IMG/VR virus record: IMGVR_UViG_3300033183_000491
Span: 1 to 64,000 of that record
DNA length: 64,000 bases
Strand: one strand, 5' to 3'
The translations under genes and the position numbers were made by a program. This document shows positions 680 to 62,825 of the stretch, one piece after another (the stretch's first letter is position 1; every line of letters starts with the position of its first letter). Below the pieces are notes generated by a model. It was not told where the DNA came from and made no database searches. It worked only from the letters and a program-made list of their open reading frames with translations.

Positions 680-1504
680 TTAATATCCTTTGATTAGGTG
701 AATCCACCCAGGTAAATATGATGACCCATTTGAAGTGAAAACAGCCTTTTCAAATTCTGCTTTATGATATTTTGTTATACCATTATAACTCCCTGAATAG
801 CCACATTTAAAGCACTCGTCCCATTTTCCAGCAGGATCATTGACATAATAAAAGTTATCTTTATATCCTCTAACAACAAGAACATGTCCTGCTGATGTGA
901 AATATCCATGAACAATAGCAATATACCCTTGTTGTAATGAATCGATTAAATCTTCTGGAGATGCGTTAGTATAAGTATTTATTGTACTATTAGCTGCATA
1001 GTTTCGATAAACAGAGTTTAATCCCGAAGGTGACTGTGCTGTATTTTTTCCATATCTTAAAAAAATTTCATCAGGAGAAATTGTGTATTGGAAATGACTA
1101 AGAATCATTGCAACTGAAGTGTTTTGACAAGTAGATGATGGTGAATATTCGTTGTCATATTGATTATAGTACGGGATGTCTAATATTTCTTCATTGTCTA
1201 AATTATTTGTATCAATATTACTCCAAAGATTTTCTGGACTAGATTCAATATCACAAAGTATAGAAGGATCTCCTAAAATAACACATGCACAAGGTCCTTC
1301 TACACAATCTTTTTGTTTTTCTTGGAAATTGTATTTAACAGCATGCAATGAGTATATACATCCGACATCACATGTAGACCCAGCGTGAAAAGTTTCAGAA
1401 TATGATTTATCTCTAAAGTCTGTTGTGTATCCTTTATAATCATCTAATTCTGAAGAGCATGATAAAACGAATAATGCATTTAATAGTAAAACTAATATTT
1501 TCAT
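680..1504 (-). CDS. Lipoprotein with C39-like (papain-fold) peptidase domain
   Basis: Lipobox-like VLSC; IPYYNQ...STCQNTSVAM (catalytic Cys), GHVLVVRGY (His), YVNDP (Asp). Confidence 0.8.
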   Translation of the reverse strand: MKILVLLLNALFVLSCSSELDDYKGYTTDFRDKSYSETFHAGSTCDVGCIYSLHAVKYNFQEKQKDCVEGPCACVILGDPSILCDIESSPENLWSNIDTNNLDNEEILDIPYYNQYDNEYSPSSTCQNTSVAMILSHFQYTISPDEIFLRYGKNTAQSPSGLNSVYRNYAANSTINTYTNASPEDLIDSLQQGYIAIVHGYFTSAGHVLVVRGYKDNFYYVNDPAGKWDECFKCGYSGSYNGITKYHKAEFEKAVFTSNGSSYLPGWIHLIKGY

Positions 1505-1549
1505 AAGACTCCTAACTAATTCAATTATATCTATTGCTAGACTATGTTA

Positions 1550-1606
1550 AATCTATTAAGTGACTTACATGTCATACCTCTCGCTTCGTCAATTTCTCGG
1601 TCTAGA
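1550..1606 (-). repeat. Copy 2 of the dispersed intergenic element
   Basis: Aligns with 10-64; lies between the terminator at 1622-1646 and the peptidase start codon. Confidence 0.75.
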
Positions 1607-1621
1607 TCTTTTTTTAGATAC

Positions 1622-1646
1622 AAAAAAACCAGCATGAAGCTGGTTT
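1622..1646 (-). terminator. Rho-independent terminator
   Basis: On the minus strand, AAACCAGC-ttcat-GCTGGTTT runs into a T tract, just downstream of the 1671-2015 stop. Confidence 0.8.
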
Positions 1647-1670
1647 AATAAGTTATCTATTTACTTAGAA

Positions 1671-2015
1671 TTAATAATCAATTCCTGGAATGTGACCTTT
1701 TGCACGATATGCTGGAGGCCTTCTTTCAGCTCTCATGCGAGCTCTTTCTTCTCTTTCTTGATCTAATCTTTTTGCGTCTTCTTTTGAATAACTTCCTGCA
1801 ACATTACCTGGTTTAATGTTGTTTCTTGTTTCCCAATCGAATAAATCGTTTTCAAATTCTACTTGTCCCATTTCTGTCGGGGAATATTGATCTCTAACAG
1901 GTTTAGGATCATCAGAAAAATCTAGTTGAGATTCGTCAAACTCATCATGAAATTGAGTTGACTCTTTAATAACACTTCTAATGATTTGTCTAAGACGTCT
2001 TTCAGTAATTTTCAT
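1671..2015 (-). CDS. Hypothetical protein with MKITERRLRQIIRSVIKE leader (putative virion-internal protein)
   Basis: Leader is shared with 45385-45750 and 45811-46209. Confidence 0.7.
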   Translation of the reverse strand: MKITERRLRQIIRSVIKESTQFHDEFDESQLDFSDDPKPVRDQYSPTEMGQVEFENDLFDWETRNNIKPGNVAGSYSKEDAKRLDQEREERARMRAERRPPAYRAKGHIPGIDY

Positions 2016-2072
2016 ATTATCTCCAGTTTAATAAACGTTTATATAGTATTATATATTACTTTATAGACAAGT

Positions 2073-2279
2073 TTATTCTATAACTGTTAAAGAAGATCTT
2101 GAAGCAACATCGATAGAGCCATCTTCAAACATAATATCATACTTTGATTGTAACTCTAGATTATCTGATATCGGGAAAGAAAATTTATATTTTCTAATTA
2201 CTAGTACTGTGTTTCCTCTAAAGTTGCACATTTTTCCTGTTAAGTCTTCTTTAGTATTAGAATTTTCTTTCATTTCCAT
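2073..2279 (-). CDS. Small hypothetical protein (SH3-like beta barrel)
   Basis: ORF track; overlaps the ligase stop; alternating beta-strand pattern. Confidence 0.5.
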   Translation of the reverse strand: MEMKENSNTKEDLTGKMCNFRGNTVLVIRKYKFSFPISDNLELQSKYDIMFEDGSIDVASRSSLTVIE

Positions 2280-3549
2280 GAATTACCTTTATAACTGGGA
2301 ATCTTAGTGAATAATCACCATTTTGATTTTGAGTTTCTTCAAAATACTGAACTGTAATAGTTTTATTTAAGATGTCGTTAGGATTTTTATAAAGATGTTT
2401 TCTTTGATCAATAGTAAATCCGCTTCCAACTCGAACTTCATTTCCTTTGTGTTCGATAGAGATGCCACTTAGCATTTCTTCTTCAACTTCAATGCCTTCT
2501 TTAATATATCTAATAGGACCAAAGAAAGCTTGCTTAACAATATACTCATCATCATAAAAAGTTTTTACTTTTAAGATATCATCAGATCTTTTACCTTTAT
2601 ATGTAGAATCCTTTCTAATCATTATTCCTTCCCATCCTTTTTCAGAAGCTTTAGTATTTAATTGTTCTAATTCGCTGAATGATGTTATGGGTGTTTGTTC
2701 AAGGAAGTCAAGATGCTTTAATTTTTTTCCTAAAAGAAGGTTTTGTAACGCTAGAATTCTTTGAGAGAATATACCTGTTTCACTATAACCTTTTGAAAAT
2801 ATTTTGTATGGGATGAAGTCAAAAATCTGAAATAGACCATTATGAATAGTATGGTCTTTTCTTCCTATTTCTTTCATTATGTCTTGAAAGTCTTCGTTTC
2901 CTTCTTCATCTACAATACACATTTCTCCGTCATAAACAATATTTTTTACGCCAAGATTTTCAATTTCTTTTTCTATTAGAGATAAAGTGTGAAATTGTTT
3001 TCCAGACCTAGCAAAAGATTTAGCCTTTCCTTTTTCATCTACGATGATTAAACATCTGACTCCATCAAGTTTTCTTGAGACGTACCAAACATCTTTTTCT
3101 AGATTAATTTTTTTCTTTGTTTTTTCGTCATATTTATTTGCCAAAGCAACATTGAAAGTCGGAATTAATCCAGGACAGGCTTTATTAATAAGTTTTGATG
3201 ATACTCTAATTTTTAAGTTTCTATCTAATATAAGATAGAATAATTCCTTATACTCAGGATTATTCAGAATGAACCCGTTTGATTCTTTTATTGCTTTATG
3301 ACCAGTAATTAATCTTTGGTTTAAAGAGTCAAGCAGATCAAAAATAGAAACAAATTTAGTATCTAAATTAGCTAAGTCTTTTCTTTTTTCTAAGTTTTTA
3401 GAAGTAATATTATATTGCATAAAAGTATTATAGGTATAGTATAAAACTTTTCTTACTTCATGACTTGATGATCTCATAATATCTACTTTATCATTTGAAG
3501 AAGTAGAACAATTCATTTTTAAAATAAAGTCGTTAATATCTTCGATCAC
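2257..3549 (-). CDS. lig: ATP-dependent DNA ligase
   Basis: Motif I SRKLDGVR, YDGE, FQIFD, GWEGIMIR, LKVK; C-terminal OB fold with VGSGFT and SLRFP. Confidence 0.95.
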   Translation of the reverse strand: MIEDINDFILKMNCSTSSNDKVDIMRSSSHEVRKVLYYTYNTFMQYNITSKNLEKRKDLANLDTKFVSIFDLLDSLNQRLITGHKAIKESNGFILNNPEYKELFYLILDRNLKIRVSSKLINKACPGLIPTFNVALANKYDEKTKKKINLEKDVWYVSRKLDGVRCLIIVDEKGKAKSFARSGKQFHTLSLIEKEIENLGVKNIVYDGEMCIVDEEGNEDFQDIMKEIGRKDHTIHNGLFQIFDFIPYKIFSKGYSETGIFSQRILALQNLLLGKKLKHLDFLEQTPITSFSELEQLNTKASEKGWEGIMIRKDSTYKGKRSDDILKVKTFYDDEYIVKQAFFGPIRYIKEGIEVEEEMLSGISIEHKGNEVRVGSGFTIDQRKHLYKNPNDILNKTITVQYFEETQNQNGDYSLRFPVIKVIHGNERKF

Positions 3550-3746
3550 TTGAAAACCTCGACAATTTTTATTGCTGTAACGTAAGCCATACTAAAAAAT
3601 ATCATTTCAAGAATACAAAACAAGCTCATCGTAATAAAGAAAACAATCTGATTTAATTTATAAATTTCTTTATTATGTTGAGCTTGATCATATGCTATAG
3701 CAATATTAAATAGTAGGATAAAAAATAATCCTAACGGATATATCAT
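3546..3746 (-). CDS. Small membrane protein
   Basis: Two hydrophobic segments; tight overlaps with both neighbours. Confidence 0.55.
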   Translation of the reverse strand: MIYPLGLFFILLFNIAIAYDQAQHNKEIYKLNQIVFFITMSLFCILEMIFFSMAYVTAIKIVEVFK

Positions 3747-3970
3747 TATTTAATATTATCAATGTCAGCTTCAGCTGAAATTGCAACGGCTTCTAAAAAG
3801 ATTTTAGAATTATATGGGATTCTCTTGTTAGTTTGTGCGCATCTATCATAAACAGCTTGTACCCTTCTTAGTGCATCCTTTGGAGAAGTCGCTTCAAAAA
3901 CGTAATCTACAACGCTTTTCTCGTATTCACCTAGTCCATGTCGATCAATTGTAATTTTATATCTCATCAT
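3746..3970 (-). CDS. Hypothetical protein
   Basis: ORF track; AAGGA SD upstream; operon packing. Confidence 0.6.
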   Translation of the reverse strand: MMRYKITIDRHGLGEYEKSVVDYVFEATSPKDALRRVQAVYDRCAQTNKRIPYNSKIFLEAVAISAEADIDNIK

Positions 3971-3987
3971 AATATTTTTCCTTTTTA

Positions 3988-4152
3988 TTAATTAGTGTAA
4001 AGTTTTGCTGCGTTTTCTGCTAGTTGTTTTGATTTGTACTTTCCAATATAGGTCCAACCTTGGGACCATTTATTTTCAGCCTTATGATAAAGTTTAATTT
4101 GGTTGTTGTCTTTAACCATCTTAAAAGTTTCTGTGTTAAAATTATATAACAT
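3988..4152 (-). CDS. Small hypothetical protein (54 aa, absent from the ORF track)
   Basis: Manual translation MLYNFNTETFKMVKDNNQIKLYHKAENKWSQGWTYIGKYKSKQLAENAAKLYTN fills the intergenic gap. Confidence 0.6.
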   Translation of the reverse strand: MLYNFNTETFKMVKDNNQIKLYHKAENKWSQGWTYIGKYKSKQLAENAAKLYTN

Positions 4153-4176
4153 AAATTTCTCTTTTATAAAAAAGTT

Positions 4177-5457
4177 TTACATATTAATGACAATGTCTGA
4201 TCTGTCATTTTCAAAAATTAGTTTGCAATTTTTAGCAAGAACCCAACATCTTTTAAGCCCTCGTGATAAAGAAGGTTTTGGAGCACCACCATCAGTAAGA
4301 ATAATATATCCATCAAATTTTTTCTTGTTTTTAATAGCATGTTTAGTTACAGCCTCAAAACAAGTTCCTCCAGATAATTGTCTTTTAATATGAGGTCTTT
4401 TGTTTTTCTTCCACAAAAATCCATTTTTATCATCTACTATGGAATCAAACCTGTAAAGATAGAAGTCTGTATTTTTAGATAATACATCTAATTCAGAATA
4501 GAACTTTGATAATTCTTCATTGGACACAGAACCGCTTTCATCAATATAAACAGCAATCATTGGACGATAGATTTTTTTATAACCAGGATAAACTCCCATA
4601 TATTTTTTATTTAATTTTCTGATAGATGATTGTCTTTCATCTTTTTTTGTATATCCACAAAATCTTTTTAGAAGAGACTCCCATTTGATTTTACTAGATA
4701 GCATTTTATAAATTTCTTGTCTTGCTTCAGAAGATACTGACCCCCAATGTCTATTTTCTGCTTCTTTGACTGCCTCTTTAACTAATTCTTTAATTTTACC
4801 TTGAAATAATTCTTTCTCACCTTCAGACATTTCGTCCCATCCATCATGATCATCAAATCCGATCATAACACTGTTTTCCATACCTTCAAGGAATTCTTTG
4901 ATTTCTGGGTCTGAAATTAGTTTTTCAAAATAATATTCTGATGTTTTATTTCTTGGTAAACTTTCGATTAAGCTTGATATCTTATTAAAATTATCGATCT
5001 CATCTTGTTTCATGTTTTTGATTTGATCTTTTGTTAAAGATAATTTTTTCCCGGGTATTAATCCACCTTTTGGAAGTTCTCTTTCTGGGATTGTAGAATT
5101 AATAGCTAAGTCTGTTCCATAATTCCAGATAATGCGTGGATCTCTTCTTCTATCAGTTGTATGTCCAAAAACTAAATGTAAACATTCATGTTTTAAAAGA
5201 CCAATAATTTCTTGTGTTTTAAGACTCGCTAGAAACTCTCTATTCCAATAAAGAGTAATATCACCATCGACACATGTAACACCAGCTGTTGGAATATCAG
5301 TAGTTTCTTGTTTATTTAAAGATCTAAGAATTCTACTATAAAAAGGTTCAGTCCAGAGAAAGTCTACTAAATACTTTGTAATATCAAAATTATCAATCTC
5401 CTCTTGAGAAACATCACGTTTAGAATAAAGATTATTGTTATTATCAGACTTACTCAT
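4177..5457 (-). CDS. Metallopeptidase-like/vWA protein (DUF2201 type), partner of the MoxR ATPase
   Basis: HECLH zincin motif, WNYGTDLAIN, MIDAS-like IDESGS, GGTCF and ILTDG. Confidence 0.88.
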   Translation of the reverse strand: MSKSDNNNNLYSKRDVSQEEIDNFDITKYLVDFLWTEPFYSRILRSLNKQETTDIPTAGVTCVDGDITLYWNREFLASLKTQEIIGLLKHECLHLVFGHTTDRRRDPRIIWNYGTDLAINSTIPERELPKGGLIPGKKLSLTKDQIKNMKQDEIDNFNKISSLIESLPRNKTSEYYFEKLISDPEIKEFLEGMENSVMIGFDDHDGWDEMSEGEKELFQGKIKELVKEAVKEAENRHWGSVSSEARQEIYKMLSSKIKWESLLKRFCGYTKKDERQSSIRKLNKKYMGVYPGYKKIYRPMIAVYIDESGSVSNEELSKFYSELDVLSKNTDFYLYRFDSIVDDKNGFLWKKNKRPHIKRQLSGGTCFEAVTKHAIKNKKKFDGYIILTDGGAPKPSLSRGLKRCWVLAKNCKLIFENDRSDIVINM

Positions 5458-8699: not shown

Positions 8700-9218
8700 T
8701 TATAGTTTTTTATAAATCTTTTTCTTCAAGATTGATTTAATCTTCTTTCTGCTTTTTAAAACATCTTTAACATAAGGAGATTTATATTCATATTTTTTAT
8801 TGCATTCTTTGTTTCTAGAATTGTTGTAATAACATAATGATTTATTTAATGGTTTAAATCTTTTAACATAATATTTGAGTGCTCTTATACCATGATAAAA
8901 TAAATCACAATTTTTAAGTAATCCATCTCTTTTAATTGCTGATATTTTATTTTTTTTGTTTGGGCACCAATATTGATATTTTATTTGAAGAGGGCCTACA
9001 CATTTATACGGATTAGGTTTTTCTTGTAATGTTAGCCCTGATTCAACCCAGGCTGTTGCTAGTACTAAAGAAGTATCAATATTGAAATTTTTTGACTCTT
9101 CGATCAAAATTGAACAAACTGCTAAATTTTCTTCTGAAGGTTTAAATGTCGATAACTTTTCATAAACTTCAGAACAAAAATTATATTGTAGAAATATAGC
9201 TAAAAATAATTTAGTCAA
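8700..9218 (-). CDS. Lytic transglycosylase-like (SLT/lysozyme fold) protein
   Basis: LVLATAWVESG (catalytic Glu), GPLQI, YYN...YVKDVL. Confidence 0.7.
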   Translation of the reverse strand: MTKLFLAIFLQYNFCSEVYEKLSTFKPSEENLAVCSILIEESKNFNIDTSLVLATAWVESGLTLQEKPNPYKCVGPLQIKYQYWCPNKKNKISAIKRDGLLKNCDLFYHGIRALKYYVKRFKPLNKSLCYYNNSRNKECNKKYEYKSPYVKDVLKSRKKIKSILKKKIYKKL

Positions 9219-9408
9219 AACTCTTTTGAACGTCTCCTGATCTATAAATTTCTATTGAATCATCAGGGTATTTTATCTTGTAAAAGATTCTTACATCTGA
9301 TGTTCCGCCTACTGTCATTTGATTATTTGACTCAGTCAAAATTTCTACAACAATACCGATTCTGTTCATTTTTTGCCAATGATAAACTCTATCACCTTTT
9401 TTTATCAT
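9211..9408 (-). CDS. Small SH3/KOW-like protein
   Basis: IKKGDRVYH...IGIVVEI pattern. Confidence 0.6.
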   Translation of the reverse strand: MIKKGDRVYHWQKMNRIGIVVEILTESNNQMTVGGTSDVRIFYKIKYPDDSIEIYRSGDVQKSFD

Positions 9409-9459: not shown

Positions 9460-10002
9460 TTATCCAAGTACACCACATTTAATTAGTGATTGTAAAACAT
9501 CTAAAAGAGCTTTCGTAGAAGACTCTCTACAAGATGAACCAGTAAAATCCATTAAAGGTTTTAAGCACAAGTCAATATCATGTGGATTAGACATTAAGTG
9601 CTGAGAACAATTATCATATGATGATGTACACGGAACTGTCTGATGAGATTGACTTCTTAAACCACGATAGTGGTCTAAAGCTTCTGGGTGTTTTGCGTGG
9701 TATTCAATATGATCAACATATTCTTGAGGGGTTACTACACCGTCGTCATTTAAGTCAAAATGATGATGTAGCTCTTCAGGAGAAATATTACCTTGATGAT
9801 CAAATTCAATGTCGTGATGAGCTTCACCACTTTCTAAAGAATGAAAATCATAACTTGATTCCTCTACGTTTTCAGGGCATTGACATATTTCGCATCCACA
9901 ACAATCGCATAAAGCTTCACATCTGCATGGGCTATATCCACACCCAGAACATGTGTTTGATGCTAAATCAAGAAATTCTCTTATTAATTTTCTTTCGCTC
10001 AT
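9460..10002 (-). CDS. Cys-rich, His-rich protein with an EF-hand-like loop
   Basis: CSGCGYSPCRCEALCDCCGCEICQC cluster; DLNDDGVVTPQE loop. Confidence 0.65.
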   Translation of the reverse strand: MSERKLIREFLDLASNTCSGCGYSPCRCEALCDCCGCEICQCPENVEESSYDFHSLESGEAHHDIEFDHQGNISPEELHHHFDLNDDGVVTPQEYVDHIEYHAKHPEALDHYRGLRSQSHQTVPCTSSYDNCSQHLMSNPHDIDLCLKPLMDFTGSSCRESSTKALLDVLQSLIKCGVLG

Positions 10003-10039: not shown

Positions 10040-11200
10040 TTACTTAAAAGATTTATTTTTTTGTGTATAATCATGTGCTTCTTTTCTACTCATTCCATTA
10101 AAAATTAAATCGGATAATTCTTTTTGAGAGTTGACAATATTCTCCAAAGAATGACATCGACTCTCAGATTCTTCAGAAAGTATTTTTAAATTTTGAATTA
10201 CATAATTTAATCTATCAAGAGTAAAACATGCAATATGTGCAGCATCTTTAAAAATAATTCTTTCTGAAGATGAGTGAGAAATATCTCTTTCTAAAAGAGA
10301 AGTACAATTTTCTACAGCAGTAGAAAAATAAGATTTAAATAATCTAACTAATCCGCAAATATTTTCTGTTAAAATTGGATTCTTTTTATGTGGCATTGCA
10401 CTTGAACCTTTTTGTTTTTCCCTGAAAGGCTCAGACATTTCGTTTATTCCGTCAATACTATAGATTCTTATATCATAAGCTATTTTTTCAACAGCTAGCA
10501 TTAGTTGTAATATACCATAGAAATAATCAAGATAATATTGACGTGGAATGATTTGCGAAGAAACAACTGGTTTTAAGCCTAAAATATCTAATGCTATTTT
10601 TTCATTCATTATAGAATTAAAAGTATAGTTTCCTGATGTTCCACTAAGTTTTCCTAATTTAATTTTAGCATTAGCTTCAATTAAGGAATCATATCCTTTT
10701 CTCAATAGAGAAAGCCATCTATAAAATACATCATAATATGTTTGTATTTCAGCAGCTCTTCCATGAGTTCTAGATAAAATCCTTGATTTAGACTCTTCAG
10801 ATTTTAAGAGTCTATTTAGGTTATAAATAAGATTTGCAGCATAACCACAAATGACATTTAAACTTTCACTACACATTAAAGACAAAGATGTATCTAAAAT
10901 ATCTGAAGATGTTAGACCATAATGAATCCATCTTCCACTATTATCAGGAATAGATTCTTCTAACATTTGAACAAATGCTTGAACGTCATGATGAGTTTCT
11001 GACTCTATCTCTTTCCAACGGTCAATGTCAATTTTAATATTTTCTTTAATAGAATTAAATTCATCATCAACGATAGTTGGATCTGTAATGTTTAAAGTTA
11101 AAGACTCTAAGTGAGCTAATTCTACTTTAAGCCATGTTTTTAGTTTGTTTTCTGTTTTCCAAATATCATGAATTTTTTGAACTTTATACCTTGGTATCAT
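10040..11200 (-). CDS. purB: Adenylosuccinate lyase
   Basis: MIPRY start, HYGLTSSDILDT, RTHG, signature GSSAMPHKKNP and ERDISHSSSER. Confidence 0.95.
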   Translation of the reverse strand: MIPRYKVQKIHDIWKTENKLKTWLKVELAHLESLTLNITDPTIVDDEFNSIKENIKIDIDRWKEIESETHHDVQAFVQMLEESIPDNSGRWIHYGLTSSDILDTSLSLMCSESLNVICGYAANLIYNLNRLLKSEESKSRILSRTHGRAAEIQTYYDVFYRWLSLLRKGYDSLIEANAKIKLGKLSGTSGNYTFNSIMNEKIALDILGLKPVVSSQIIPRQYYLDYFYGILQLMLAVEKIAYDIRIYSIDGINEMSEPFREKQKGSSAMPHKKNPILTENICGLVRLFKSYFSTAVENCTSLLERDISHSSSERIIFKDAAHIACFTLDRLNYVIQNLKILSEESESRCHSLENIVNSQKELSDLIFNGMSRKEAHDYTQKNKSFK

Positions 11201-11375
11201 TTTTTACCTTACTTATATTTTTTGTACTTACAACAATTAGTCTTTTATTATCATAGACTAAACAATAGTTTTTTATTTTTGAATCTATCTTGCTTGGACT
11301 ATAGTTTAAAAAAACCATGTATGATTTATAACTTTTATGATAAACCAAGTCTCCTTCTTTAAGATCATTTATCAT
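11184..11375 (-). CDS. Small SH3/KOW-like protein
   Basis: LKEGDLVYH; overlaps both purA and purB. Confidence 0.55.
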   Translation of the reverse strand: MINDLKEGDLVYHKSYKSYMVFLNYSPSKIDSKIKNYCLVYDNKRLIVVSTKNISKVKNDTKV

Positions 11376-12573
11376 TATTAGACCAGACTATTTCGCCTCT
11401 CTTCGGTCCTGTTGTAAATGATATCTGATTTACTCCTGTATGCATTTCAATGTTATGTAATAGTTCAACAAATCCTAAGTCAGAAAGACTTACTGAGTTA
11501 ATCTTGTATGTTTTATATTTTCTTCCATGAACATAAAAATGTGGGTTGTCAATATGTGTCATAACGTCTGTTTTAACAACACATAAATGAGATACTCCAT
11601 TTTGTTTGACAGCTGTTCTGATTTCGTCTAAATCAATCCAACCACATTGTCTTGGTCTTCCCGTTGTTGCACCAAATTCTTGACCAACTTCAGATAATAT
11701 TTTTTCTTGGCCGTCTGTTATAATACTTGGAAAATCTCCACTTCCTACTTTTGTCTTATAAGACTTGATAACACCAATAACTTCATCGATCTGAGTGTGG
11801 TTAAGACCCGTTGAATTTAAAGCTCCTCCAATTGAAGGAGATGATGAAGTTACGTCAGGATAATTGTTAGAATAAATACTAAGTCCACTTCCTTGTGCAC
11901 CTTCTAAAAGAATATTATAGTTTCTATCATAATAATCTTGAATTAAATCAAATTCATCCTCAACAACATATCCCTTTAAAATAGAAGACATTTCCATAAA
12001 TTTTTCTTGCCAAGAATTAAAATTATTAAAATCTTTTTGTAAGTCTTCTAAAGTTTCTCCGTTCTGTGCTCTTTTTTCTTGAAGATCAAAAAACTTAGAT
12101 TGTATATTCATTAAAGATTTTTCAGGACTATTAATAATATCTTTAACTAAGATAGAATCTCTAGCATAAAAATCTGAATATGCTGGACCAATTCCTTTTG
12201 CAGTTGTTCCTAGTTTCTTTTGATACTTAAGTCTATCAATAATCTTATGTGTTGGTTCAATAATTGGACAAAATCCAGAAACTGTAAGGTTTTGTAGTGG
12301 CTTTACATTAAGATCCATGATTTCATCACAAAAATCTTCGATATCAAGAACGCATCCACGAGAAATTACATTTAATACTTCCTTTGATAAGACACCAACT
12401 GGAAGTATATGAGTTACAAATTTGTTTCCTTTTTTATCATATACAGTATGTCCTGCATTTCCTCCCCCTTGGAATCGAATAACGACATCTGCCCAAGTTT
12501 GAACTAAGTCATCTACGATTCTACCTTTTCCTTCGTCTCCATGTTGAAGACCTAAAACTAATTTAACTGGCAT
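11365..12573 (-). CDS. purA: Adenylosuccinate synthetase
   Basis: GLQHGDEGKG (Asp retained), RFQGGGNAGHT, GIGPAY, LLEGAQG and GATTGRPR. Confidence 0.95.
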   Translation of the reverse strand: MPVKLVLGLQHGDEGKGRIVDDLVQTWADVVIRFQGGGNAGHTVYDKKGNKFVTHILPVGVLSKEVLNVISRGCVLDIEDFCDEIMDLNVKPLQNLTVSGFCPIIEPTHKIIDRLKYQKKLGTTAKGIGPAYSDFYARDSILVKDIINSPEKSLMNIQSKFFDLQEKRAQNGETLEDLQKDFNNFNSWQEKFMEMSSILKGYVVEDEFDLIQDYYDRNYNILLEGAQGSGLSIYSNNYPDVTSSSPSIGGALNSTGLNHTQIDEVIGVIKSYKTKVGSGDFPSIITDGQEKILSEVGQEFGATTGRPRQCGWIDLDEIRTAVKQNGVSHLCVVKTDVMTHIDNPHFYVHGRKYKTYKINSVSLSDLGFVELLHNIEMHTGVNQISFTTGPKRGEIVWSNNDK

Positions 12574-13631
12574 TATTTACCCTTATTAAAAATATGTGGA
12601 TTACCTTCTGTATGTGAAGATGAAGTTTGTTTTCTAAAAACAGCTAACTCTTTAAGTTCTAAAAGGTTTGATGCGCCGCTATAAGACATACCACTTCTTA
12701 CATTCGACATGATTTCATTAATAACTTTAGATGTTGTTCCTTTATAAGGAACGAAGGAAGCGACTCCTTCAATTGAATTATAGGAACCTTTCCAATTTTT
12801 TTGTGCAGCTTTTGAAGCCATCCCGTTATATCTTTTAACTTTTCTTCCTTCTTGAGTAATTATTTTCCCTGGTGTTTCTTTAGTTCCACTTAAAATAGAA
12901 CCAAGCATTACAAAATCTGCACCTGCAGCAAGTGATTTAACAATATCACCAGAATTTTTTATTCCACCATCAGCTACAATATAAGGAACAAAGTTTTCAC
13001 CTTGATCTATTAGATCTTTCTTAGCTTGGTCACATTCAAGTACAGCCTGAAATGTTGGGATTCCGTGTCCAGTTTGGATTCTTGTTGTACAAATACTTCC
13101 ACTACCGACAGATGTTCTAATTGCATGAGCGCCTGATTTTGCTAATCTTTTATATGCATGTCCTGTTGCAACATTTCCTGCCATTATAAAAAGATGTGGA
13201 TACTCATTTCTAATATATTCTATTGCTTTTTCCATTAAGATATGATCACCATGTGCAATATCAATACAAACAATACTTAGATCATTTTTTACTAACTCTT
13301 CTAATCTTTCTTTGTAATCACCTGATGCTCCGATTGCAGCTGCCCTATAATCTCTATGATTAACATATCCTAATAGTTTTGATTGATAATCAATTGAATT
13401 ATATCTGTGAATAATCCCTAATCCCCCATGACTTATCATTGCATTGGACATATAAGACTCAGTAACTGTTGACATAGGGGAGCTAATAATTGGGATACTA
13501 AACCTTAAACTTTTGTCATTATATAAAACTTCAATAGATGTATCAATATTTTTCCTAGATACAAGATCAGAATATTGTGGTTCTAATATTACATCATCAA
13601 AGCTTAAAACTTCTTTTTCGATTATTCTCAT
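12573..13631 (-). CDS. IMPDH/GMP reductase family enzyme without CBS domains, possibly a GMP reductase
   Basis: [44 protein letters not shown] and EGV; no Arg-Tyr dyad in the flap. Confidence 0.9.
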
Positions 13632-13652
13632 TTTATTTCCTTTATATAGAAA

Positions 13653-13681
13653 AGTATAATAAATTAAATTTCTATTTACAC
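13653..13681 (-). promoter_or_regulatory. Promoter GTGTAA-N17-TATACT
   Basis: Upstream of the purine operon. Confidence 0.7.
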
Positions 13682-13688
13682 CAAAGAA

Positions 13689-14609
13689 TTACATATCATT
13701 TAAAAAATCTTTTCTATATTTTAGTAAAGCTTTTTCTTTACATTTAGCTTCTAACATTATATCGACAGATTTTCCAACACTGTCAAAGGGTTTATAATAA
13801 TAATCAGAGTGAGCAGCTGCAGACCTAATTGAAGAGTCTTCGAATTCTTTTTTTCCATTTGAATGGTGACAAGTTGGACGAATTGTTGAAGGCCAAGAAT
13901 CATATGCCATCTCAAATGATTCTTTATAAGGAGCATCTTCTGGGCCAATACTGAAATGGTGTGAATCAAATACAATTGGAATTTTTGAAACTTTATAAAT
14001 ATTGTCATATAAAAACTTTGTACTAAACATAGCAGGTTTATCATCATTTTCTACTGTTAGTCTTGATTGAACTGAAGGTGATAGTTTTCTAAAGTTTTTA
14101 TTAAAGTTATCAGCAGCTAACTTTCTGTTGCCTCCACATGTTGACCCTAAATGAATATTAATTTTAGACCAATGATTTTGATCTAATCCCATCAAGTCAA
14201 ATATTTTACCATGAATTTCTAGATCTTTAATACACAATTCAACAACATGGTCTTTTTCTGAAGCTAGACAATTAAATTGACCAGGATGGAAAGAAACTCT
14301 TTGATTAATTACTTTAGTGTAGTCACCAGCCATTTTAAGATAATGAGCTATTTCTTCATAGTCAGGTAGATCTTGTAAATTATATTCAGATGCCCAAGGT
14401 GCAATCTCTGAAGATATTCTAAAAACTTTTACATTGTTTTTGTAATTCCAATGGAAAATAGGTAATAAGTCTTTTACATTTTGAAGAACTATTTTTGAAA
14501 CATACGGAAGACCTTTAGATTCAAAGGTTGCTTTTCTCATAGTCCTAGAGTTAAAAATATTCTTTTCTCTAAGTTCCATGTTGATACAAGCATATCCGAA
14601 TTGATTCAT
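13689..14609 (-). CDS. uvsE: UV-damage endonuclease
   Basis: FGYACIN, FRISS, SFHPGQF, NIHLG, LTVENDD, VFDSHH, HSDY and MLEAKCKE. Confidence 0.95.
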   Translation of the reverse strand: MNQFGYACINMELREKNIFNSRTMRKATFESKGLPYVSKIVLQNVKDLLPIFHWNYKNNVKVFRISSEIAPWASEYNLQDLPDYEEIAHYLKMAGDYTKVINQRVSFHPGQFNCLASEKDHVVELCIKDLEIHGKIFDLMGLDQNHWSKINIHLGSTCGGNRKLAADNFNKNFRKLSPSVQSRLTVENDDKPAMFSTKFLYDNIYKVSKIPIVFDSHHFSIGPEDAPYKESFEMAYDSWPSTIRPTCHHSNGKKEFEDSSIRSAAAHSDYYYKPFDSVGKSVDIMLEAKCKEKALLKYRKDFLNDM

Positions 14610-40586: not shown

Positions 40587-41303
40587 TTAAAGTATTTTTG
40601 AAACACTATCAGCTTTTTTAATTCTGTCTTCAATAACAGACCAGTTCAACTCTTTCATCATTCCAAAAACATAGGTTTTTCTATCTTTTAGATAATCTCT
40701 ATAATAACTATGTTCCCAACAATCCATAACTATTACTGGAATCATACCAACCATTACATTTTGACTATGAAGATCTATAATTGTGTTTACAAATCTTTTT
40801 AGATAAATGTCATAGTAAGTAATTGCCCAACCATTTCTAGCAGAAAGACAACATGCTACAAAATCTTCTTGCCAAGAATCAAATGTACCAAAATCTCTAG
40901 ATAATCTCATATAAGAAAGAGAATCCATAGTAATACTACTATTTAAATCACTTATATTTTCAAAATATAGGCCGTGTAGAAAAGCTGCGTTGTGATTATA
41001 AGACTCATCTATTTTAAGACTTCTAAAATTAGAATTATTAAGATTAGCTGATGTTTTATCTACGCCGTCTAATGAAGAAGATATTTTATTTAATTTTTCA
41101 ATATAACCTTCAAGTAATTCTTGATGAGCTTTTTTTGTTTTAGAAGATAACAATTCAGTCTGTAAACTAAAACTTCCAGGTTCTACAACGTAAGATTCAT
41201 TTAAACTTTCTTTTTTTGATTCACTATCACTATGGTTTATAGAGCTTTGATCATTCATAGTATTATCAATAGCTTCTTTTATTATTTGATCTAAACTTTT
41301 CAT
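40587..41303 (-). CDS. sod: Fe/Mn superoxide dismutase with N-terminal extension
   Basis: AHQELLEGY, NAAFLHGLYF, GWA and MDCWEHSYYRDY. Confidence 0.88.
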   Translation of the reverse strand: MKSLDQIIKEAIDNTMNDQSSINHSDSESKKESLNESYVVEPGSFSLQTELLSSKTKKAHQELLEGYIEKLNKISSSLDGVDKTSANLNNSNFRSLKIDESYNHNAAFLHGLYFENISDLNSSITMDSLSYMRLSRDFGTFDSWQEDFVACCLSARNGWAITYYDIYLKRFVNTIIDLHSQNVMVGMIPVIVMDCWEHSYYRDYLKDRKTYVFGMMKELNWSVIEDRIKKADSVSKIL

Positions 41304-41807: not shown

Positions 41808-42230
41808 CTAATTATCAATATATGATGTAACTTCAATATTAGAAGATTCTAACATTTTAATTCCTGTTTCATCTCTATATCTTTCTTTGTAAACAACTTT
41901 TTTAATTCCACTATTTATTATAGCCATTGCACAGTTTTCACATGGGCTCAATGTTAAATACATAATTTTATCTTTTGGATTATTATAATCTAATTTTAAC
42001 AAAGCATTAATTTCAGCATGCAATAATCCACTGCAACCAGGTTCATCAGATTGAGGTACGTTTGACATTCCTGCTGCATTTCCATTATACCCTAAAGAAA
42101 GAACTTGTGTATTATCTGATGTAACTATTAATGATCCTACCTTAAAATTAGGATGATGACTTCTTTGTGATATTGTTTCTGCCATTGTCATCCAAACTTT
42201 ATCCCAGCTTGGCCTATTTATTTCTAACAC
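41808..42230 (-). CDS. dcd: dCMP deaminase
   Basis: RPSWD, VGSLIV, GYNG, LHAEINAL and TLSPCENCA. Confidence 0.92.
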   Translation of the reverse strand: MLEINRPSWDKVWMTMAETISQRSHHPNFKVGSLIVTSDNTQVLSLGYNGNAAGMSNVPQSDEPGCSGLLHAEINALLKLDYNNPKDKIMYLTLSPCENCAMAIINSGIKKVVYKERYRDETGIKMLESSNIEVTSYIDN

Positions 42231-42704: not shown

Positions 42705-43571
42705 TTCTTTTTTCCATGACGCGATTTTTCTTTCTAATTTTAACTTTTTTTCTTCTTCAAGGCAATCTTCAATTGTAATTCTATTCCAAGGGTAAACTTT
42801 TCCTGTATTTGTTTTTGCCTGAATTGTTTTTATTCCTTTTATAGAGTAAAGATATATCTTTGAGTCTTCTATAATAACGTTTCTTTTAAATCTTAATAAT
42901 TTAGGAGGTCTTCCCAAATCAGACATTTCTTGATCCTTATAAAGTAAATCTTTACTATCCCATGGTATGGCAAATTTAATCGCATCTTCTTTGTAAGGAG
43001 TTACGTAAGAATACTTTTTTAAGATACTAAACCTTTTTTGACTCCCATGATAAAATATTCTTTTGCTAATTTCAGGTATATAATACTGAGGTTTTACTTT
43101 AAACGGAATAAAAACTTCTATGTCGTTTATAGGTCTATCAATAAATTGTAAATCTTCTTTAGATTCATCTTCATACCAAACTTTATATGTATTAACAAAT
43201 CCTTGAATACCTTTTGAAAAAACAGTTTCTCCATTTAATGTCAAAGAAAATAAACATTTTTCAATTTCATGAGGTAAAAGTTTAAAATAATAAGTATACT
43301 CTTTTCTTTCTAAAATTTGATCTGGCCTGTGAGAGTTAGTAGCATTAAATAATGATGCTCTTACAAAAGAAGTATTTTTTTCATGATACGGAAAGTATTC
43401 TCTAACTTCAGACTCGATAATTTTTAATTTATCACCTTGATCTATATTATTATATCTTTTTGGCCTTAGACATTTTTTGTATTTTAAATCACTACAAACA
43501 AACCAAATATCAGAAGTCAAGAATTTTGCTCCTAAATCTTTTACTTCGAAAGGAACATTAATTTTTTTCAA
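42690..43571 (-). CDS. Hypothetical protein with C-terminal ADP-ribosyltransferase-like motif
   Basis: IFYHGS.....KKYSYVTP..EDAIKFA resembles Arr-type ARTs. Confidence 0.45.
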   Translation of the reverse strand: MKKINVPFEVKDLGAKFLTSDIWFVCSDLKYKKCLRPKRYNNIDQGDKLKIIESEVREYFPYHEKNTSFVRASLFNATNSHRPDQILERKEYTYYFKLLPHEIEKCLFSLTLNGETVFSKGIQGFVNTYKVWYEDESKEDLQFIDRPINDIEVFIPFKVKPQYYIPEISKRIFYHGSQKRFSILKKYSYVTPYKEDAIKFAIPWDSKDLLYKDQEMSDLGRPPKLLRFKRNVIIEDSKIYLYSIKGIKTIQAKTNTGKVYPWNRITIEDCLEEEKKLKLERKIASWKKELYFN

Positions 43572-44140
43572 ATATATCTCTCTTTAAAAGTAGTATAATG
43601 TTTAGCACATCTTGGTTCATACATTCCTTTTGATCCTATTCTCTCTTCAGCTGAAGCGTTGTTGATATCAAACATAGCTTCAGTAAAATATGCGTCTTGA
43701 TCACAGTCAGTACAAACAGCAGGACAAACTTCTATTCTTGTTGCCCAAGGCATCATATTTTTTATATTCTCAAAAGGTATCTCGTTTGCATCTAATTGAA
43801 TTGAAGACACTATTATATTAATACCTTTGCGATATAAAGAAATCAAAACAGAATCAATATCTTGAATCATAAAAGCCTCATCAACAGCTATAACTGTATT
43901 TGAGTTAAACATTTCTTCATTAACATAACATAAAATCTCTTCTGCATGATTAATACAAAACGCTGGATAAGAAGCTCCAGTATGAGTACTAATCGATTCT
44001 TTTGTATATCTATTGTCTCTCTTAGCTTTAAAAGCAAGAACATTTCGTCCTTTATATAAAGATCGATCGATGTCCGACATTAACTTTGTTGTTTTTGACC
44101 CAAACATTGGTCCTGTATATATTGTAAATTGAGGATTCAT
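43568..44140 (-). CDS. tdk: Thymidine kinase (type II)
   Basis: GPMFGSKTT, AVDEA, C..C..DAYFT and YEPRCAKH. Confidence 0.93.
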   Translation of the reverse strand: MNPQFTIYTGPMFGSKTTKLMSDIDRSLYKGRNVLAFKAKRDNRYTKESISTHTGASYPAFCINHAEEILCYVNEEMFNSNTVIAVDEAFMIQDIDSVLISLYRKGINIIVSSIQLDANEIPFENIKNMMPWATRIEVCPAVCTDCDQDAYFTEAMFDINNASAEERIGSKGMYEPRCAKHYTTFKERYI

Positions 44141-46209: not shown

Positions 46210-46240
46210 TTAATCAAACTTGTTAAAATAATTAATCAAA
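46197..46240. repeat. Exact 22-bp tandem duplication CTTGTTAAAATAATTAATCAAA
   Basis: Copies at 46197-46218 and 46219-46240 span the convergent stops. Confidence 0.9.
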
Positions 46241-47308: not shown

Positions 47309-47330
47309 TATAAACCTTTCTTTTTAATTT

Positions 47331-47359
47331 ATTGTACATAATTAATTTTTTGTTTACAC
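47331..47359 (-). promoter_or_regulatory. Promoter GTGTAA-N17-TACAAT for dnaE-C
   Basis: The -35 box coincides with the endonuclease's last codon and stop (GTG TAA). Confidence 0.65.
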
Positions 47360-57671: not shown

Positions 57672-57879
57672 GAAACTCCGATATTATTTTTGCATAAATT
57701 ATCAACTCAGAATCAATCTTCTGAATTTCTTTTCCATTAAGTAAATAAACATTAGTGATACCATTCCAGTAATCAGTTTTAATATCTAGAACTAAACAAA
57801 TATTTGGAGTACCTTCTATAAACTTGTCTTTTCTATAGTAAGAAATTAAACTTCCTTTTTTAAATCTCTTTTGATCCAA
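57661..57879 (-). CDS. Small SH3/KOW-like protein
   Basis: FKKGSLISY...CLVLDI. Confidence 0.55.
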   Translation of the reverse strand: MDQKRFKKGSLISYYRKDKFIEGTPNICLVLDIKTDYWNGITNVYLLNGKEIQKIDSELIIYAKIISEFHER

Positions 57880-62120: not shown

Positions 62121-62825
62121 TTAACTTCTGTTAATAAAAGAATTAACTGTTACAGGCCATAATTCAGAAATTATATTTAACATTTCGTTTGCTAATTGTT
62201 GAATTTCCCATTGTGCACCTTCATGAGTTCTAAGTTCAATAAACTTAAGAATATTATTTAAATTAGCTGTAGCATAATATTCAGTATATAAATTTTGTGG
62301 AAGAATTCCTCTTGCTTGCTCTCTACAAACACCCACTGACAGAAGAGTATCAAATAATTTTAATGAATCTTTATGATAATTTTTAATAGCTTCTGAAACT
62401 GTAACTGTTAACGGAGTTGAGCTATAATCTGTATTAAACGAAATTTCTGGATTAATTAAATCTTCAATGTTAGACGATTGTCTATTGGATTTATGTTGAG
62501 TCCTAAAAGACTCAGGTTGATAGAATTCTAAATTAGAATCTGTATATCTTCGGCTGATTTCGTTATAAGACCATGTTCTATGCCTATGATGTTGAGATCT
62601 AACAAAAAGTGGGACTTTAATTCTAAAGGTTGCAATATTATGCTCAAGAGTTGAAGTATGTTTATGATTAATAAGATAATTGATTAGTTTTTCATCTTTT
62701 TGGTCTAAAGAGTCTTTATGAACTCCGAAAGAAACTCTTGCTGAATTTACTACGGTGATATCTTCTCCGACATGTTGTACTAATTCAATTTTACCAATAT
62801 TATCATCATATAAATAATTTGTCAT
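62121..62825 (-). CDS. thyX: Flavin-dependent thymidylate synthase
   Basis: VNSARVSF, HTSTLEH, RHRTWSYNEISRRY, EQARGILP and LR....AQWEI. Confidence 0.95.
   Translation of the reverse strand: MTNYLYDDNIGKIELVQHVGEDITVVNSARVSFGVHKDSLDQKDEKLINYLINHKHTSTLEHNIATFRIKVPLFVRSQHHRHRTWSYNEISRRYTDSNLEFYQPESFRTQHKSNRQSSNIEDLINPEISFNTDYSSTPLTVTVSEAIKNYHKDSLKLFDTLLSVGVCREQARGILPQNLYTEYYATANLNNILKFIELRTHEGAQWEIQQLANEMLNIISELWPVTVNSFINRS

What the first reader, a model, noticed from the sequence alone, without database searches (positions are those of the whole stretch)
10040..13631. Possible G-to-A purine conversion operon (GMP reductase, PurA, PurB) in an AT-rich phage
The IMPDH/GMPR-family gene precedes purA and purB behind one promoter. 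Its flap reads [23 protein letters not shown] and lacks the Arg-Tyr dyad that IMPDHs need for hydrolysis. GMASK resembles the GuaB1-type GMP reductases of mycobacteria. GMP to IMP to adenylosuccinate to AMP would convert guanine nucleotides from a GC-rich host into the adenine this AT-rich genome needs. An automatic guaB call would imply the opposite flux.
Basis: partly seen in the sequence, partly recalled or inferred. Interest (0 to 1): 0.65.

Follow-up and report, generated by a model that had tools for sequence, protein, structure and literature searches.

The report
Phage guanine-to-adenine nucleotide conversion genes
An AT-rich marine jumbo phage carries three tightly packed genes that most likely turn guanine nucleotides into adenine nucleotides, and the first enzyme belongs to a large virus-borne group that databases tend to mislabel as IMP dehydrogenase.

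Summary
All of them overlap or abut. The quoted flap is exact and has no Arg-Tyr dyad.

The first enzyme is most likely a GMP reductase (about 0.65). It keeps the shared catalytic Cys, Thr and Glu. It has GMAS where every dyad-bearing IMPDH in my set has GMGS or GEAS. Its flap is shorter than all but one of those IMPDHs. It lies outside the IMPDH clade (support 100/96). It is neither a GuaB1 member nor a classical GuaC, and it fails every curated cut-off. It belongs to a CBS-less, mostly viral group with at least 527 IMG/VR loci.

PurA and PurB keep their catalytic residues, and PurA is not PurZ. The gene order is kept in all 17 close relatives examined (local GC 26-34%); in one, the contig ends inside purA. 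The complete genome (239,550 bp, 29.3% GC) lacks guaA, CTP synthase and preQ0 genes. It has dCMP deaminase, ThyX, thymidine kinase and RNR.

The "GC-rich host" and "one promoter" claims are unsupported. Activity is inferred, not shown.

The parts
12573..13631 (-). IMPDH/GMPR-family enzyme, 352 aa, no CBS/Bateman domain; predicted GMP reductase of a virus-dominated 'GMAS short-flap' group
   Evidence: PF00478 E 1.7e-95. It is below all NCBIfam equivalog cut-offs. Cys181, Thr183 and Glu288 are invariant. The AF2 model has pLDDT 91. It lies outside the dyad-bearing IMPDH clade.
12762..12830 (-). Active-site flap, residues 268-290 (YNGMAS...IEGV): no Arg-Tyr dyad, 14 residues between GMAS and EG
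Evidence: Largely invariant in 15 close homologues. The pattern GMAS-x-x-AQ-x-x-W-[KR]-G is kept, with rare substitutions, in 80 viral loci. Flap lengths: 14 here, IMPDH median 24, GuaC median 17.
11365..12573 (-). Adenylosuccinate synthetase (PurA-like), 402 aa; its start overlaps the stop of the upstream gene (TAATG)
   Evidence: PF00709 E 3.3e-94. NF002223 scores 309.6 bits (cut-off 402); PurZ model scores 124.8 (cut-off 300). 212 bits to H. pylori AdSS against 43-74 bits to PurZ-type structures. The E. coli equivalents of Asp13, Lys16, Asn38, His41, Thr128/129, Gln224, Arg303, Arg305, Lys331 and Asp333 are kept. Junction sequence.
11184..11375 (-). Small ORF, 63 aa, unknown function, overlapping purA by 11 nt and purB by 17 nt
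   Evidence: No Pfam or NCBIfam hit. An ORF of 52-75 aa sits at the same place in relatives, 27-28% identical. Junctions.
10040..11200 (-). Adenylosuccinate lyase (PurB-like, B. subtilis/T. maritima type), 386 aa, about 50 aa shorter at the C-terminus than solved homologues
   Evidence: TIGR00928 scores 307.8 bits (cut-off 326.2). 231 bits to T. maritima ASL 1c3u over residues 1-378 of 431. The His68 and His141 equivalents and the GSSAMPHKKNP loop are kept. Relatives have the same length, 383 aa.
13632..13688 (-). 57-nt AT-rich spacer between uvdE and gene 1, with AGGA eight bases before the ATG; no promoter could be established
   Evidence: Sequence; promoter scan at chance level; no clearly conserved motif among 12 relatives.
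41808..42230 (-). Context: dCMP deaminase (C -> U step of the pyrimidine counterpart)
   Evidence: PF00383 E 1.5e-23.
43568..44140 (-). Context: thymidine kinase
   Evidence: PF00265 E 1.8e-32.
62121..62825 (-). Context: ThyX thymidylate synthase (a second, divergent ThyX-like gene lies at 59401-60372)
   Evidence: PF02511 E 6.6e-50 and 4.5e-20.

Best explanation
The four overlapping minus-strand genes form a self-contained module that converts guanine ribonucleotides into adenine ribonucleotides.

Step 1 (inferred): the CBS-less IMPDH/GMPR-family enzyme deaminates and reduces GMP to IMP with NADPH. It uses the Cys181 thioimidate intermediate and the Thr183/Glu288 pair to protonate the leaving ammonia. 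Its truncated flap, which lacks the dyad, does not hydrolyse the intermediate to XMP.

Step 2 (inferred from fully conserved catalytic and ligand residues): PurA condenses IMP with aspartate at the cost of GTP.

Step 3 (inferred likewise): PurB releases fumarate to give AMP.

Host adenylate kinase and the phage ribonucleotide reductase then feed dATP. Together with the phage's dCMP deaminase, ThyX and thymidine kinase, the module shifts the infected cell's nucleotide pool towards A and T for a 29% GC genome. The surplus G more likely comes from host RNA and free nucleotides than from a GC-rich host chromosome. The 63-aa ORF has no assigned role.
For: Flap and motif:
- There is no Arg-Tyr dyad.
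- Replacing Arg418 slows hydrolysis about 1000-fold. GMPRs lack the dyad and have a truncated flap (PMC2525682).
- In 78 aligned family members, the 26 dyad-bearing proteins have GMGS (24) or GEAS (2). None of the 52 dyad-less proteins has Gly at that position. The proven GMPRs among them are GM[S]S or GS[AS]S, and the phage group is GMAS.
- Mycobacterial GMPR binds GMP through Met387-Ala388.
- Cys, Thr and Glu are invariant in all 78.

Phylogeny and paralogy:
- In an ML tree with the flap columns removed, all dyad-bearing IMPDHs form one branch (100/96). The viral group (100/99) lies outside it, weakly on the GuaC side (82/51).
- In 7 of 8 cellular genomes, a GMAS/no-dyad protein coexists with a canonical IMPDH.
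- In one of these (L043), the GMAS protein sits directly after purA-purB.

The other genes and conservation:
- PurA and PurB keep their catalytic residues, and PurA is not PurZ.
- The gene order is kept in all 17 IMG/VR loci at 63% identity or more, with local GC 26-34%. In one of them the contig ends inside purA. It is also kept in L002-L006.
- Stop/start overlaps link the genes.

Genome content and precedent:
- The complete genome has no guaA, CTP synthase or adenylate kinase.
- It has RNR, dCMP deaminase and ThyX and thymidine kinase.
- Precedent for a GMPR-homologue -> PurA -> PurB sequence: TubD/ToyE (PMC6112128).
Against: - No activity data exist.
- Overall similarity is highest to IMPDH. 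TIGR01302 gives the best score (270 bits). Identity is 38-41% to bacterial IMPDH cores against 31-33% to GuaC. The best fold matches are IMPDH catalytic domains with the CBS domain deleted (TM 0.88-0.90).
- The protein fails every curated GMPR cut-off.
- The AU test does not reject a tree that joins the viral group to the IMPDH clade (p = 0.115).
- IMPDH has a second, slower water-activation route through Thr321-Glu431. Both residues are present here, so a dyad-less enzyme could still be a slow IMPDH (PMC2525682).
- A basic residue (Lys/Arg281) is conserved in the flap.
- Gene adjacency is not diagnostic. In L062, purA sits next to a canonical IMPDH.
- The link between the trio and low GC rests on one lineage.
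Confidence: 0.65

Rival explanations
1. Gene 1 is a minimal IMP dehydrogenase, CBS-less and using the ancestral Thr-Glu water-activation route or the conserved Lys/Arg281. The cluster then boosts both branches from IMP: XMP/GMP with host GuaA, and AMP with phage PurA/PurB.
For: Best HMM score is to IMP_dehydrog. Highest identity and best fold matches are to IMPDH cores. JGI annotates relatives as IMPDH. The AU test cannot separate the group from IMPDH. The Thr321-Glu431 pathway exists. purA lies next to a canonical IMPDH in L062.
Against: No Arg-Tyr dyad; GMAS rather than GMGS. At 14 residues the flap is 10 shorter than the IMPDH median of 24; the IMPDH range is 16-26. The protein is excluded from the IMPDH clade at 100/96. 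Related cellular dyad-less proteins are second copies beside a true IMPDH. There is no guaA in the phage. Two enzymes competing for IMP would be an odd pair to couple translationally.
Confidence: 0.15
2. The trio acts on a non-standard substrate. One option is deoxynucleotides: dGMP -> dIMP -> dAMP, direct salvage of degraded DNA, as PurZ uses dGMP. The other is a modified purine such as a 7-deazaguanine nucleotide, as ToyE/ToyG/ToyF do, giving an unusual adenine-type base.
For: PurA homologues that use dGMP exist in phages (PurZ hits). TubD/ToyE are GMPR homologues working on 7-deaza nucleotides. All three phage proteins are divergent and below the equivalog cut-offs. A staphylococcal-nuclease-like gene lies near the trio in relatives.
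Against: No TGT/DpdA, QueC or GTP cyclohydrolase I in the complete genome. PurA keeps the Asp13 and His41 equivalents and all IMP, Asp and GTP ligands of E. coli PurA. It scores 212 bits to AdSS against 43-74 bits to PurZ-type structures. The ribose-binding Asp221 of gene 1 is kept. The phage has its own RNR, so a ribonucleotide route suffices.
Confidence: 0.1
3. PurA/PurB serve mainly to rebuild the adenylate pool from IMP, for example after host defences deaminate or deplete ATP. Gene 1 merely adds IMP supply, and genome composition is irrelevant.
For: Only indirect. About 50%-identical relatives of gene 1 occur in phage contigs with local GC 34-48% without adjacent purA/purB. So the first enzyme is not restricted to AT-rich phages.
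Against: No defence or counter-defence gene is linked to the trio in the loci inspected. The full trio was seen only in loci with local GC 26-34%. The parallel C -> T gene set fits a composition-driven reading.
Confidence: 0.05

Closest known systems
Classical GMP reductases GuaC type 1 (E. coli, human GMPR1/2; TIGR01305, NF003470) and type 2 (B. subtilis; TIGR01306)
   Same: About 350 aa, no CBS domain. Cys-Thr loop and the Glu before the last strand. Truncated flap without Arg-Tyr. Ser or Ala rather than Gly after the loop Met/Ser. Weakly on the same side of the tree (82/51).
   Different: Only 29-33% identical. Scores of 159-234 bits lie well below the cut-offs of 344-492. The flap is 14 residues with a conserved AQ..W[KR]G, against 17 (type 1) or 10 (type 2). 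The C-terminus resembles the IMPDH ...E-x-x-P-H tail.
Bacterial IMP dehydrogenase GuaB catalytic domain (TIGR01302; e.g. 1vrd, 4my1, 4q32)
   Same: Highest sequence (38-41%) and fold similarity (TM about 0.9); same barrel, Cys loop and C-terminal tail.
   Different: No Arg-Tyr dyad; GMAS rather than GMGS. The flap is 14 residues against an IMPDH median of 24 (range 16-26). No Bateman domain. Outside the IMPDH clade. 270 bits against a cut-off of 481.5.
Mycobacterial GuaB1 GMP reductase (NF052358; PDB 7oy9)
   Same: An IMPDH-like protein proven to be a GMPR. Its GMP-binding loop uses Met-Ala, as in GMAS here.
   Different: GuaB1 has a CBS domain that is required in vivo and is described as Actinobacteria-specific. 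The phage protein has none. It scores 195-206 bits against cut-offs of 549-675, and its C-terminal third matches 7oy9 worse (48 bits) than IMPDH (98) or human GMPR2 (75).
Legionella pneumophila 'IMP dehydrogenase' 3r2g (structural-genomics entry, 361 aa)
   Same: CBS-less, flap GMASREAQ... without Arg-Tyr; 217 bits over the full length. The closest solved member of the same motif class.
   Different: Cellular; 18-residue flap; function not found in the literature held.
ToyE/ToyG/ToyF and TubD of toyocamycin and tubercidin biosynthesis
   Same: A dedicated GMPR homologue followed by adenylosuccinate synthetase and lyase steps to turn a guanine-type nucleotide into an adenine-type one. TubD reduces GMP with NADPH in vitro.
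   Different: Those act on 7-deazapurines and sit beside preQ0/CDG genes. No such genes are in this phage.
PurZ/PurB route to 2-aminoadenine in Z-genome phages
   Same: A phage-borne PurA homologue plus an adenylosuccinate lyase step.
   Different: The phage PurA keeps the PurA catalytic set. It scores 125 bits on the PurZ model (cut-off 300) and is 24-29% identical to phage PurZ-like genes, against 35-38% to bacterial PurA.

Membership tests
GMP reductase (functional class, EC 1.7.1.7) | IMPDH/GMPR (beta/alpha)8 barrel with catalytic Cys and Thr on one loop and the conserved Glu | tested here: met
   PF00478 full length. Cys181, Thr183 and Glu288 are invariant in 78 family members. The model has pLDDT 91.
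GMP reductase (functional class, EC 1.7.1.7) | No Arg-Tyr dyad and a flap truncated relative to IMPDH | tested here: met
   the criterion comes from PMC2525682.
GMP reductase (functional class, EC 1.7.1.7) | Passes a curated GuaC model (TIGR01305, NF003470, TIGR01306, NF003966) | tested here: not met
   219, 234, 159 and 199 bits against cut-offs of 492, 397, 466 and 344.
GMP reductase (functional class, EC 1.7.1.7) | Groups with characterised GMPRs in a tree | tested here: inconclusive
   On the GuaC side at only 82/51. The AU test does not reject a join with IMPDH (p = 0.115). GuaB1 and T. brucei GMPR sequences could not be placed.
GMP reductase (functional class, EC 1.7.1.7) | [quoted passage not shown] | not testable with these tools
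   Needs an enzyme assay or guaC complementation.
IMP dehydrogenase (GuaB, EC 1.1.1.205) | Arg-Tyr dyad on a long mobile flap | tested here: not met
IMP dehydrogenase (GuaB, EC 1.1.1.205) | Inside the clade of dyad-bearing IMPDHs; passes TIGR01302 | tested here: not met
   Excluded by a 100/96 branch. 270.5 bits against a cut-off of 481.5.
GuaB1-type GMP reductase | CBS/Bateman domain (needed in vivo) and passing NF052358 or NF005869 | tested here: not met
   No CBS domain. 195 and 206 bits against cut-offs of 675 and 549. PMC9790621.
Adenylosuccinate synthetase (PurA) | Catalytic Asp13/His41, P-loop Lys16, IMP, aspartate (Arg303, Arg305) and guanine (Lys331, Asp333) ligands | tested here: met
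   Alignment with E. coli PurA; PF00709.
Adenylosuccinate synthetase (PurA) | Passes the curated equivalog cut-off | tested here: not met
   309.6 bits against 402 (NF002223); 292.8 against 395.6 (TIGR00184). About 30 aa are deleted in the C-terminal part.
PurZ (succino-amino-deoxyadenylate synthase) | Passes NF038379; closest to PurZ structures | tested here: not met
   124.8 bits against 300. 43-74 bits to PurZ-type chains against 212 bits to AdSS.
Adenylosuccinate lyase (PurB, TIGR00928 type) | Catalytic His68 and His141 and the Ser-loop signature | tested here: met
   Alignment to T. maritima 1c3u.
Adenylosuccinate lyase (PurB, TIGR00928 type) | Full-length domain 3; passes the curated cut-off | tested here: not met
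   It ends at the position of residue 378 of 431. 307.8 bits against 326.2. The short form is kept in relatives.
7-deazapurine (Toy/Tub-like or Dpd-like) pathway | preQ0/CDG genes (GTP cyclohydrolase I, QueC) or a DpdA/TGT transglycosylase in the same genome | tested here: not met
   No match in the complete genome, with controls positive. QueD and QueE were not searched.

The most novel reading that the evidence does not exclude
The module works at the deoxynucleotide level, or on a modified purine. In the deoxy version, dGMP released from degraded DNA is converted directly to dAMP (dGMP -> dIMP -> succino-dAMP -> dAMP). That would be a ribonucleotide-reductase-independent purine swap, mirroring the way PurZ phages use dGMP. 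The CBS-less GMAS short-flap enzymes would then be a new class of (d)GMP reductases specific to viruses.
Probability: 0.08. Interest if true: 0.8.

Novelty: new variant of a known kind. Interest (0 to 1): 0.5.

Why it matters
If the assignment is right, phages do more than boost nucleotide supply. They re-tune the purine ratio of the infected cell to their own base composition, with a G -> A module beside the familiar C -> T genes (dCMP deaminase, ThyX).

It would also define a large group of GMP reductases, mostly viral, with at least 527 IMG/VR loci. No curated model captures this group, and pipelines often call it IMP dehydrogenase, which reverses the inferred flux in metabolic readings of marine viromes.

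The dyad-less, GMAS-type second copies in Chloroflexota, Bdellovibrionota, archaea and Legionella (3r2g) would deserve the same re-examination.

Tried and rejected
- 7-deazapurine route: searched the complete genome for TGT/DpdA, QueC and GTP cyclohydrolase I and found none.
- PurZ/Z-base route: rejected by HMM and PDB scores and by the catalytic residues.
- Promoter and terminator scan: at chance level. The alignment of upstream regions showed no clear motif.
- Transcript evidence: only DNA metagenomes from seawater, marine and estuary samples (10 studies) hold the stretch, and no RNA run does.
- Host:
  - No tRNA in the window.
  - Only 1 of 401 Pelagibacterales genomes holds a viral-type gene. 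That is the SAG already found, on a 7-kb phage-like contig, 51-53% identical and without purA beside it.
  - Cluster-member names gave nothing beyond one Flavobacteriia MAG label.
  - The host stays unknown.
- GuaC type 1 references: a sample of 41 genomes drawn around a Burkholderiales MAG yielded none. E. coli GuaC and a SAR11 GuaC were used instead.
- GuaB1 and T. brucei GMPR sequences could not be brought into the tree. They are known here only as PDB hits and from papers.
- Foldseek cannot separate function. The top hits are IMPDH cores.
- Literature searches found no description of a phage GMPR-purA-purB cluster or of 3r2g.
- The 437-aa 'fused PurB' gene call in L005 is an artefact, because a stop codon lies inside it.
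- The costly representative-protein search was not used. It returns no names and would not have settled function.
Full report
**Observation.** The window is the first 64 kb of a complete virus record. The record is 239,550 bp long, has a 141-bp direct terminal repeat and is 29.3% GC. The stretch 10040-13631 carries four overlapping ORFs on the minus strand:
- an IMPDH/GMPR-family gene, 13631..12573, 352 aa;
- purA, 12573..11365, 402 aa;
- an unannotated 63-aa ORF, 11375..11184;
- purB, 11200..10040, 386 aa.

Pfam and NCBIfam confirm the three families, but none of the three proteins reaches a curated equivalog cut-off. The junctions are a TAATG stop/start overlap, an 11-nt overlap and a 17-nt overlap. 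A single promoter cannot be shown. The sigma-70 scan is at chance level, and the upstream regions of 12 relatives share no clear motif. The trio's GC (30.4%) matches the genome, so it is not a recent import.

**Is gene 1 an IMPDH or a GMPR? Similarity points to IMPDH.**
- The best HMM score is to IMP_dehydrog: 270 bits in two pieces, because the CBS domain is absent.
- Identity is 38-41% to bacterial IMPDH cores against 29-33% to GuaC.
- A confident AF2 model (pLDDT 91) superposes best on engineered CBS-deleted IMPDH domains (TM 0.88-0.90).

**The mechanistic markers point the other way.**
- IMPDH needs the flap Arg-Tyr dyad to hydrolyse the enzyme-XMP intermediate. Replacing the Arg costs about 1000-fold. 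GMPRs lack the dyad and have a truncated flap, while Thr321 and Glu431 are shared by both (PMC2525682).
- The phage protein keeps Cys181, Thr183 and Glu288 but has no dyad.
- Its flap has 14 residues between GMAS and EG. The median is 24 in IMPDH (range 16-26) and 17 in GuaC.
- In 78 aligned family members, the 26 dyad-bearing proteins read GMGS (24) or GEAS (2) at the purine-binding loop. None of the 52 dyad-less proteins has Gly there.
- The proven mycobacterial GMPR binds GMP through Met387-Ala388 (PMC9790621).

**Phylogeny.** I built a careful ML tree (78 rows, LG+C20, flap columns removed). All dyad-bearing IMPDHs fall on one branch (100/96). This includes E. coli GuaB and the naturally CBS-less proteins of Parachlamydiaceae and a haemoplasma. 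The viral group (100/99) lies outside that branch, next to two other phage proteins and weakly (82/51) on the side of GuaC types 1 and 2. The deep position is not resolved. An AU test does not reject a tree that joins the viral group to the IMPDH clade (lnL difference 29, p = 0.115).

**Paralogy in cells.** Dyad-less GMAS proteins also occur in Chloroflexota, Bdellovibrionota, Nitrososphaerales, Vulcanimicrobiota and a Burkholderiales MAG, with or without CBS. In 7 of 8 genomes checked they coexist with a canonical dyad-bearing IMPDH. That argues for a different function. In one Thermoflexales MAG (L043) the GMAS protein directly follows purA and purB, a cellular echo of the phage trio. As a caution, in L062 purA lies next to a canonical IMPDH, so adjacency is not diagnostic. 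The structural-genomics entry 3r2g from Legionella (CBS-less, flap GMASREAQ...) is the closest solved member of this motif class and is uncharacterised.

**PurA and PurB.**
- PurA keeps the E. coli equivalents of Asp13, Lys16, Asn38, His41, Thr128/129, Gln224, Arg303, Arg305, Lys331 and Asp333. It has a deletion of about 30 aa in a C-terminal surface region.
- PurA scores 212 bits to H. pylori AdSS against 43-74 bits to PurZ-type structures. It is 35-38% identical to bacterial PurA and 24-29% to phage PurZ-like genes.
- PurB keeps the His68 and His141 equivalents and the GSSAMPHKKNP loop. It ends about 50 aa before solved homologues, and relatives share that length.
- The small ORF is kept in position but is only 27-28% identical among lineages.

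**Conservation.**
- Relatives of gene 1 at 65-84% identity abound in marine metagenomes, on contigs of up to 278 kb.
- The order gene 1 - purA - small ORF - purB recurs in L002-L006.
- In IMG/VR, at least 527 loci encode a relative.
- Among the 80 best loci, all 17 at 63% identity or more (local GC 26-34%) have gene 1 followed by purA. Sixteen also show purB. In the last, the contig ends inside purA.
- The other 63 loci (about 50% identity, local GC 34-48%) lack adjacent purA/purB. Five of them have a short PurA-like gene within 5 kb.
- The 80 share a 14-residue flap with the pattern GMAS-x-x-AQ-x-x-W-[KR]-G, with rare substitutions. Tyr284 is not conserved outside the jumbo clade.

**Genome context.**
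- The complete genome has no GMP synthase, CTP synthase or adenylate kinase.
- It has a ribonucleotide reductase, two dCMP deaminase-family genes, ThyX and a ThyX-like gene and thymidine kinase.
- The detected phage enzymes therefore push towards A and T. I found none that pushes towards G or C.
- No TGT/DpdA, QueC or GTP cyclohydrolase I was found. This removes support for a Toy/Tub-like 7-deazapurine route, although TubD/ToyE remain a useful precedent for GMPR homologue -> PurA -> PurB chemistry (PMC6112128).

**Host.** Nothing supports a GC-rich host. The stretch occurs only in seawater, marine and estuary DNA metagenomes. The only cell-labelled relatives come from a Pelagibacteraceae SAG contig and from Flavobacteriales/Flavobacteriia MAG contigs, all AT-rich marine lineages. 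That SAG has its own bona fide GuaC, and 400 other Pelagibacterales genomes lack the viral gene. The host is unknown. My inference is that the surplus G comes from host RNA and free nucleotides.

**Verdict.** The module most likely converts GMP to AMP (confidence 0.65). Gene 1 belongs neither to GuaB1 nor to classical GuaC but to a CBS-less, short-flap, GMAS-type group that is mostly viral and often mislabelled as IMPDH. This is a new variant of a known kind, of moderate interest. Enzyme assays and guaB/guaC complementation would decide it.

Noticed in passing
window 11184-11375 (-): A 63-aa ORF wedged between purA and purB, overlapping both. An ORF of 52-75 aa is kept at the same place in related phages but is only 27-28% identical. 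Similar small 'K-x-G-D-L/V' ORFs occur nearby (for example 9211-9408). Function unknown.
   Followed up: partly
G000:C1 about 67,490-70,120 (outside the window): The ribonucleotide reductase large subunit matches in three pieces in different frames, one with an internal TAA. This suggests an interrupted gene (intron, intein or homing endonuclease) or a frameshift.
   Followed up: no
window 46232-51081 (-): A DnaE-type DNA polymerase III alpha (PHP, NTPase and finger domains; 931 aa) has its helix-hairpin-helix tail in a separate 358-aa ORF. An unassigned 328-aa ORF lies between them, so the replicative polymerase may be split.
   Followed up: no
window 26980-28611 (-), 40587-41303 (-), 57860-58663 (-), 13689-14609 (-): The phage encodes a GroEL-like chaperonin, an Fe/Mn superoxide dismutase domain protein, an Fpg/Nei DNA glycosylase and a UvdE UV endonuclease. 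That is an unusually rich set of stress and repair genes.
   Followed up: no
window 59401-60372 (-) and 62121-62825 (-); G000:C1 230721-231026 (+): There are two ThyX-family genes, one divergent and longer (323 aa). A second, weak dCMP-deaminase-family gene lies far from the first.
   Followed up: no
L146, L177, L178, L192, L204 (IMG/VR loci, local GC 35-48%): A short PurA-like gene (333-347 aa) lies 2-4 kb upstream of the viral GMAS-type gene. It lacks the helical insert, keeps the GDEGKG and NAGH motifs, and is closer to PurA than to PurZ models. This may be a second, looser form of the same pairing.
   Followed up: partly
L043 (Thermoflexales MAG) 1152-5455; L207: A cellular purA-purB-GMAS/no-dyad cluster, with a canonical IMPDH elsewhere in the same genome. 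NCBIfam's IMPDH equivalog passes one tested dyad-less CBS-bearing protein of this kind (L094: 553 bits, cut-off 481.5). Many 'IMPDH' annotations in Chloroflexota and archaea may therefore be GMP reductases.
   Followed up: partly
L007 2632-3252 and L008 2123-2737: In the two phage-like contigs binned with a Pelagibacteraceae SAG and a Flavobacteriales MAG, a PP-loop ATPase (PF01171) lies about 1 kb upstream of the GMAS-type gene. Role unknown.
   Followed up: no
window 9460-10002 (-): A Cys/His-rich acidic 180-aa protein lies directly downstream of purB. Relatives have faint EF-hand hits. It is kept next to the trio in L002/L003.
   Followed up: no
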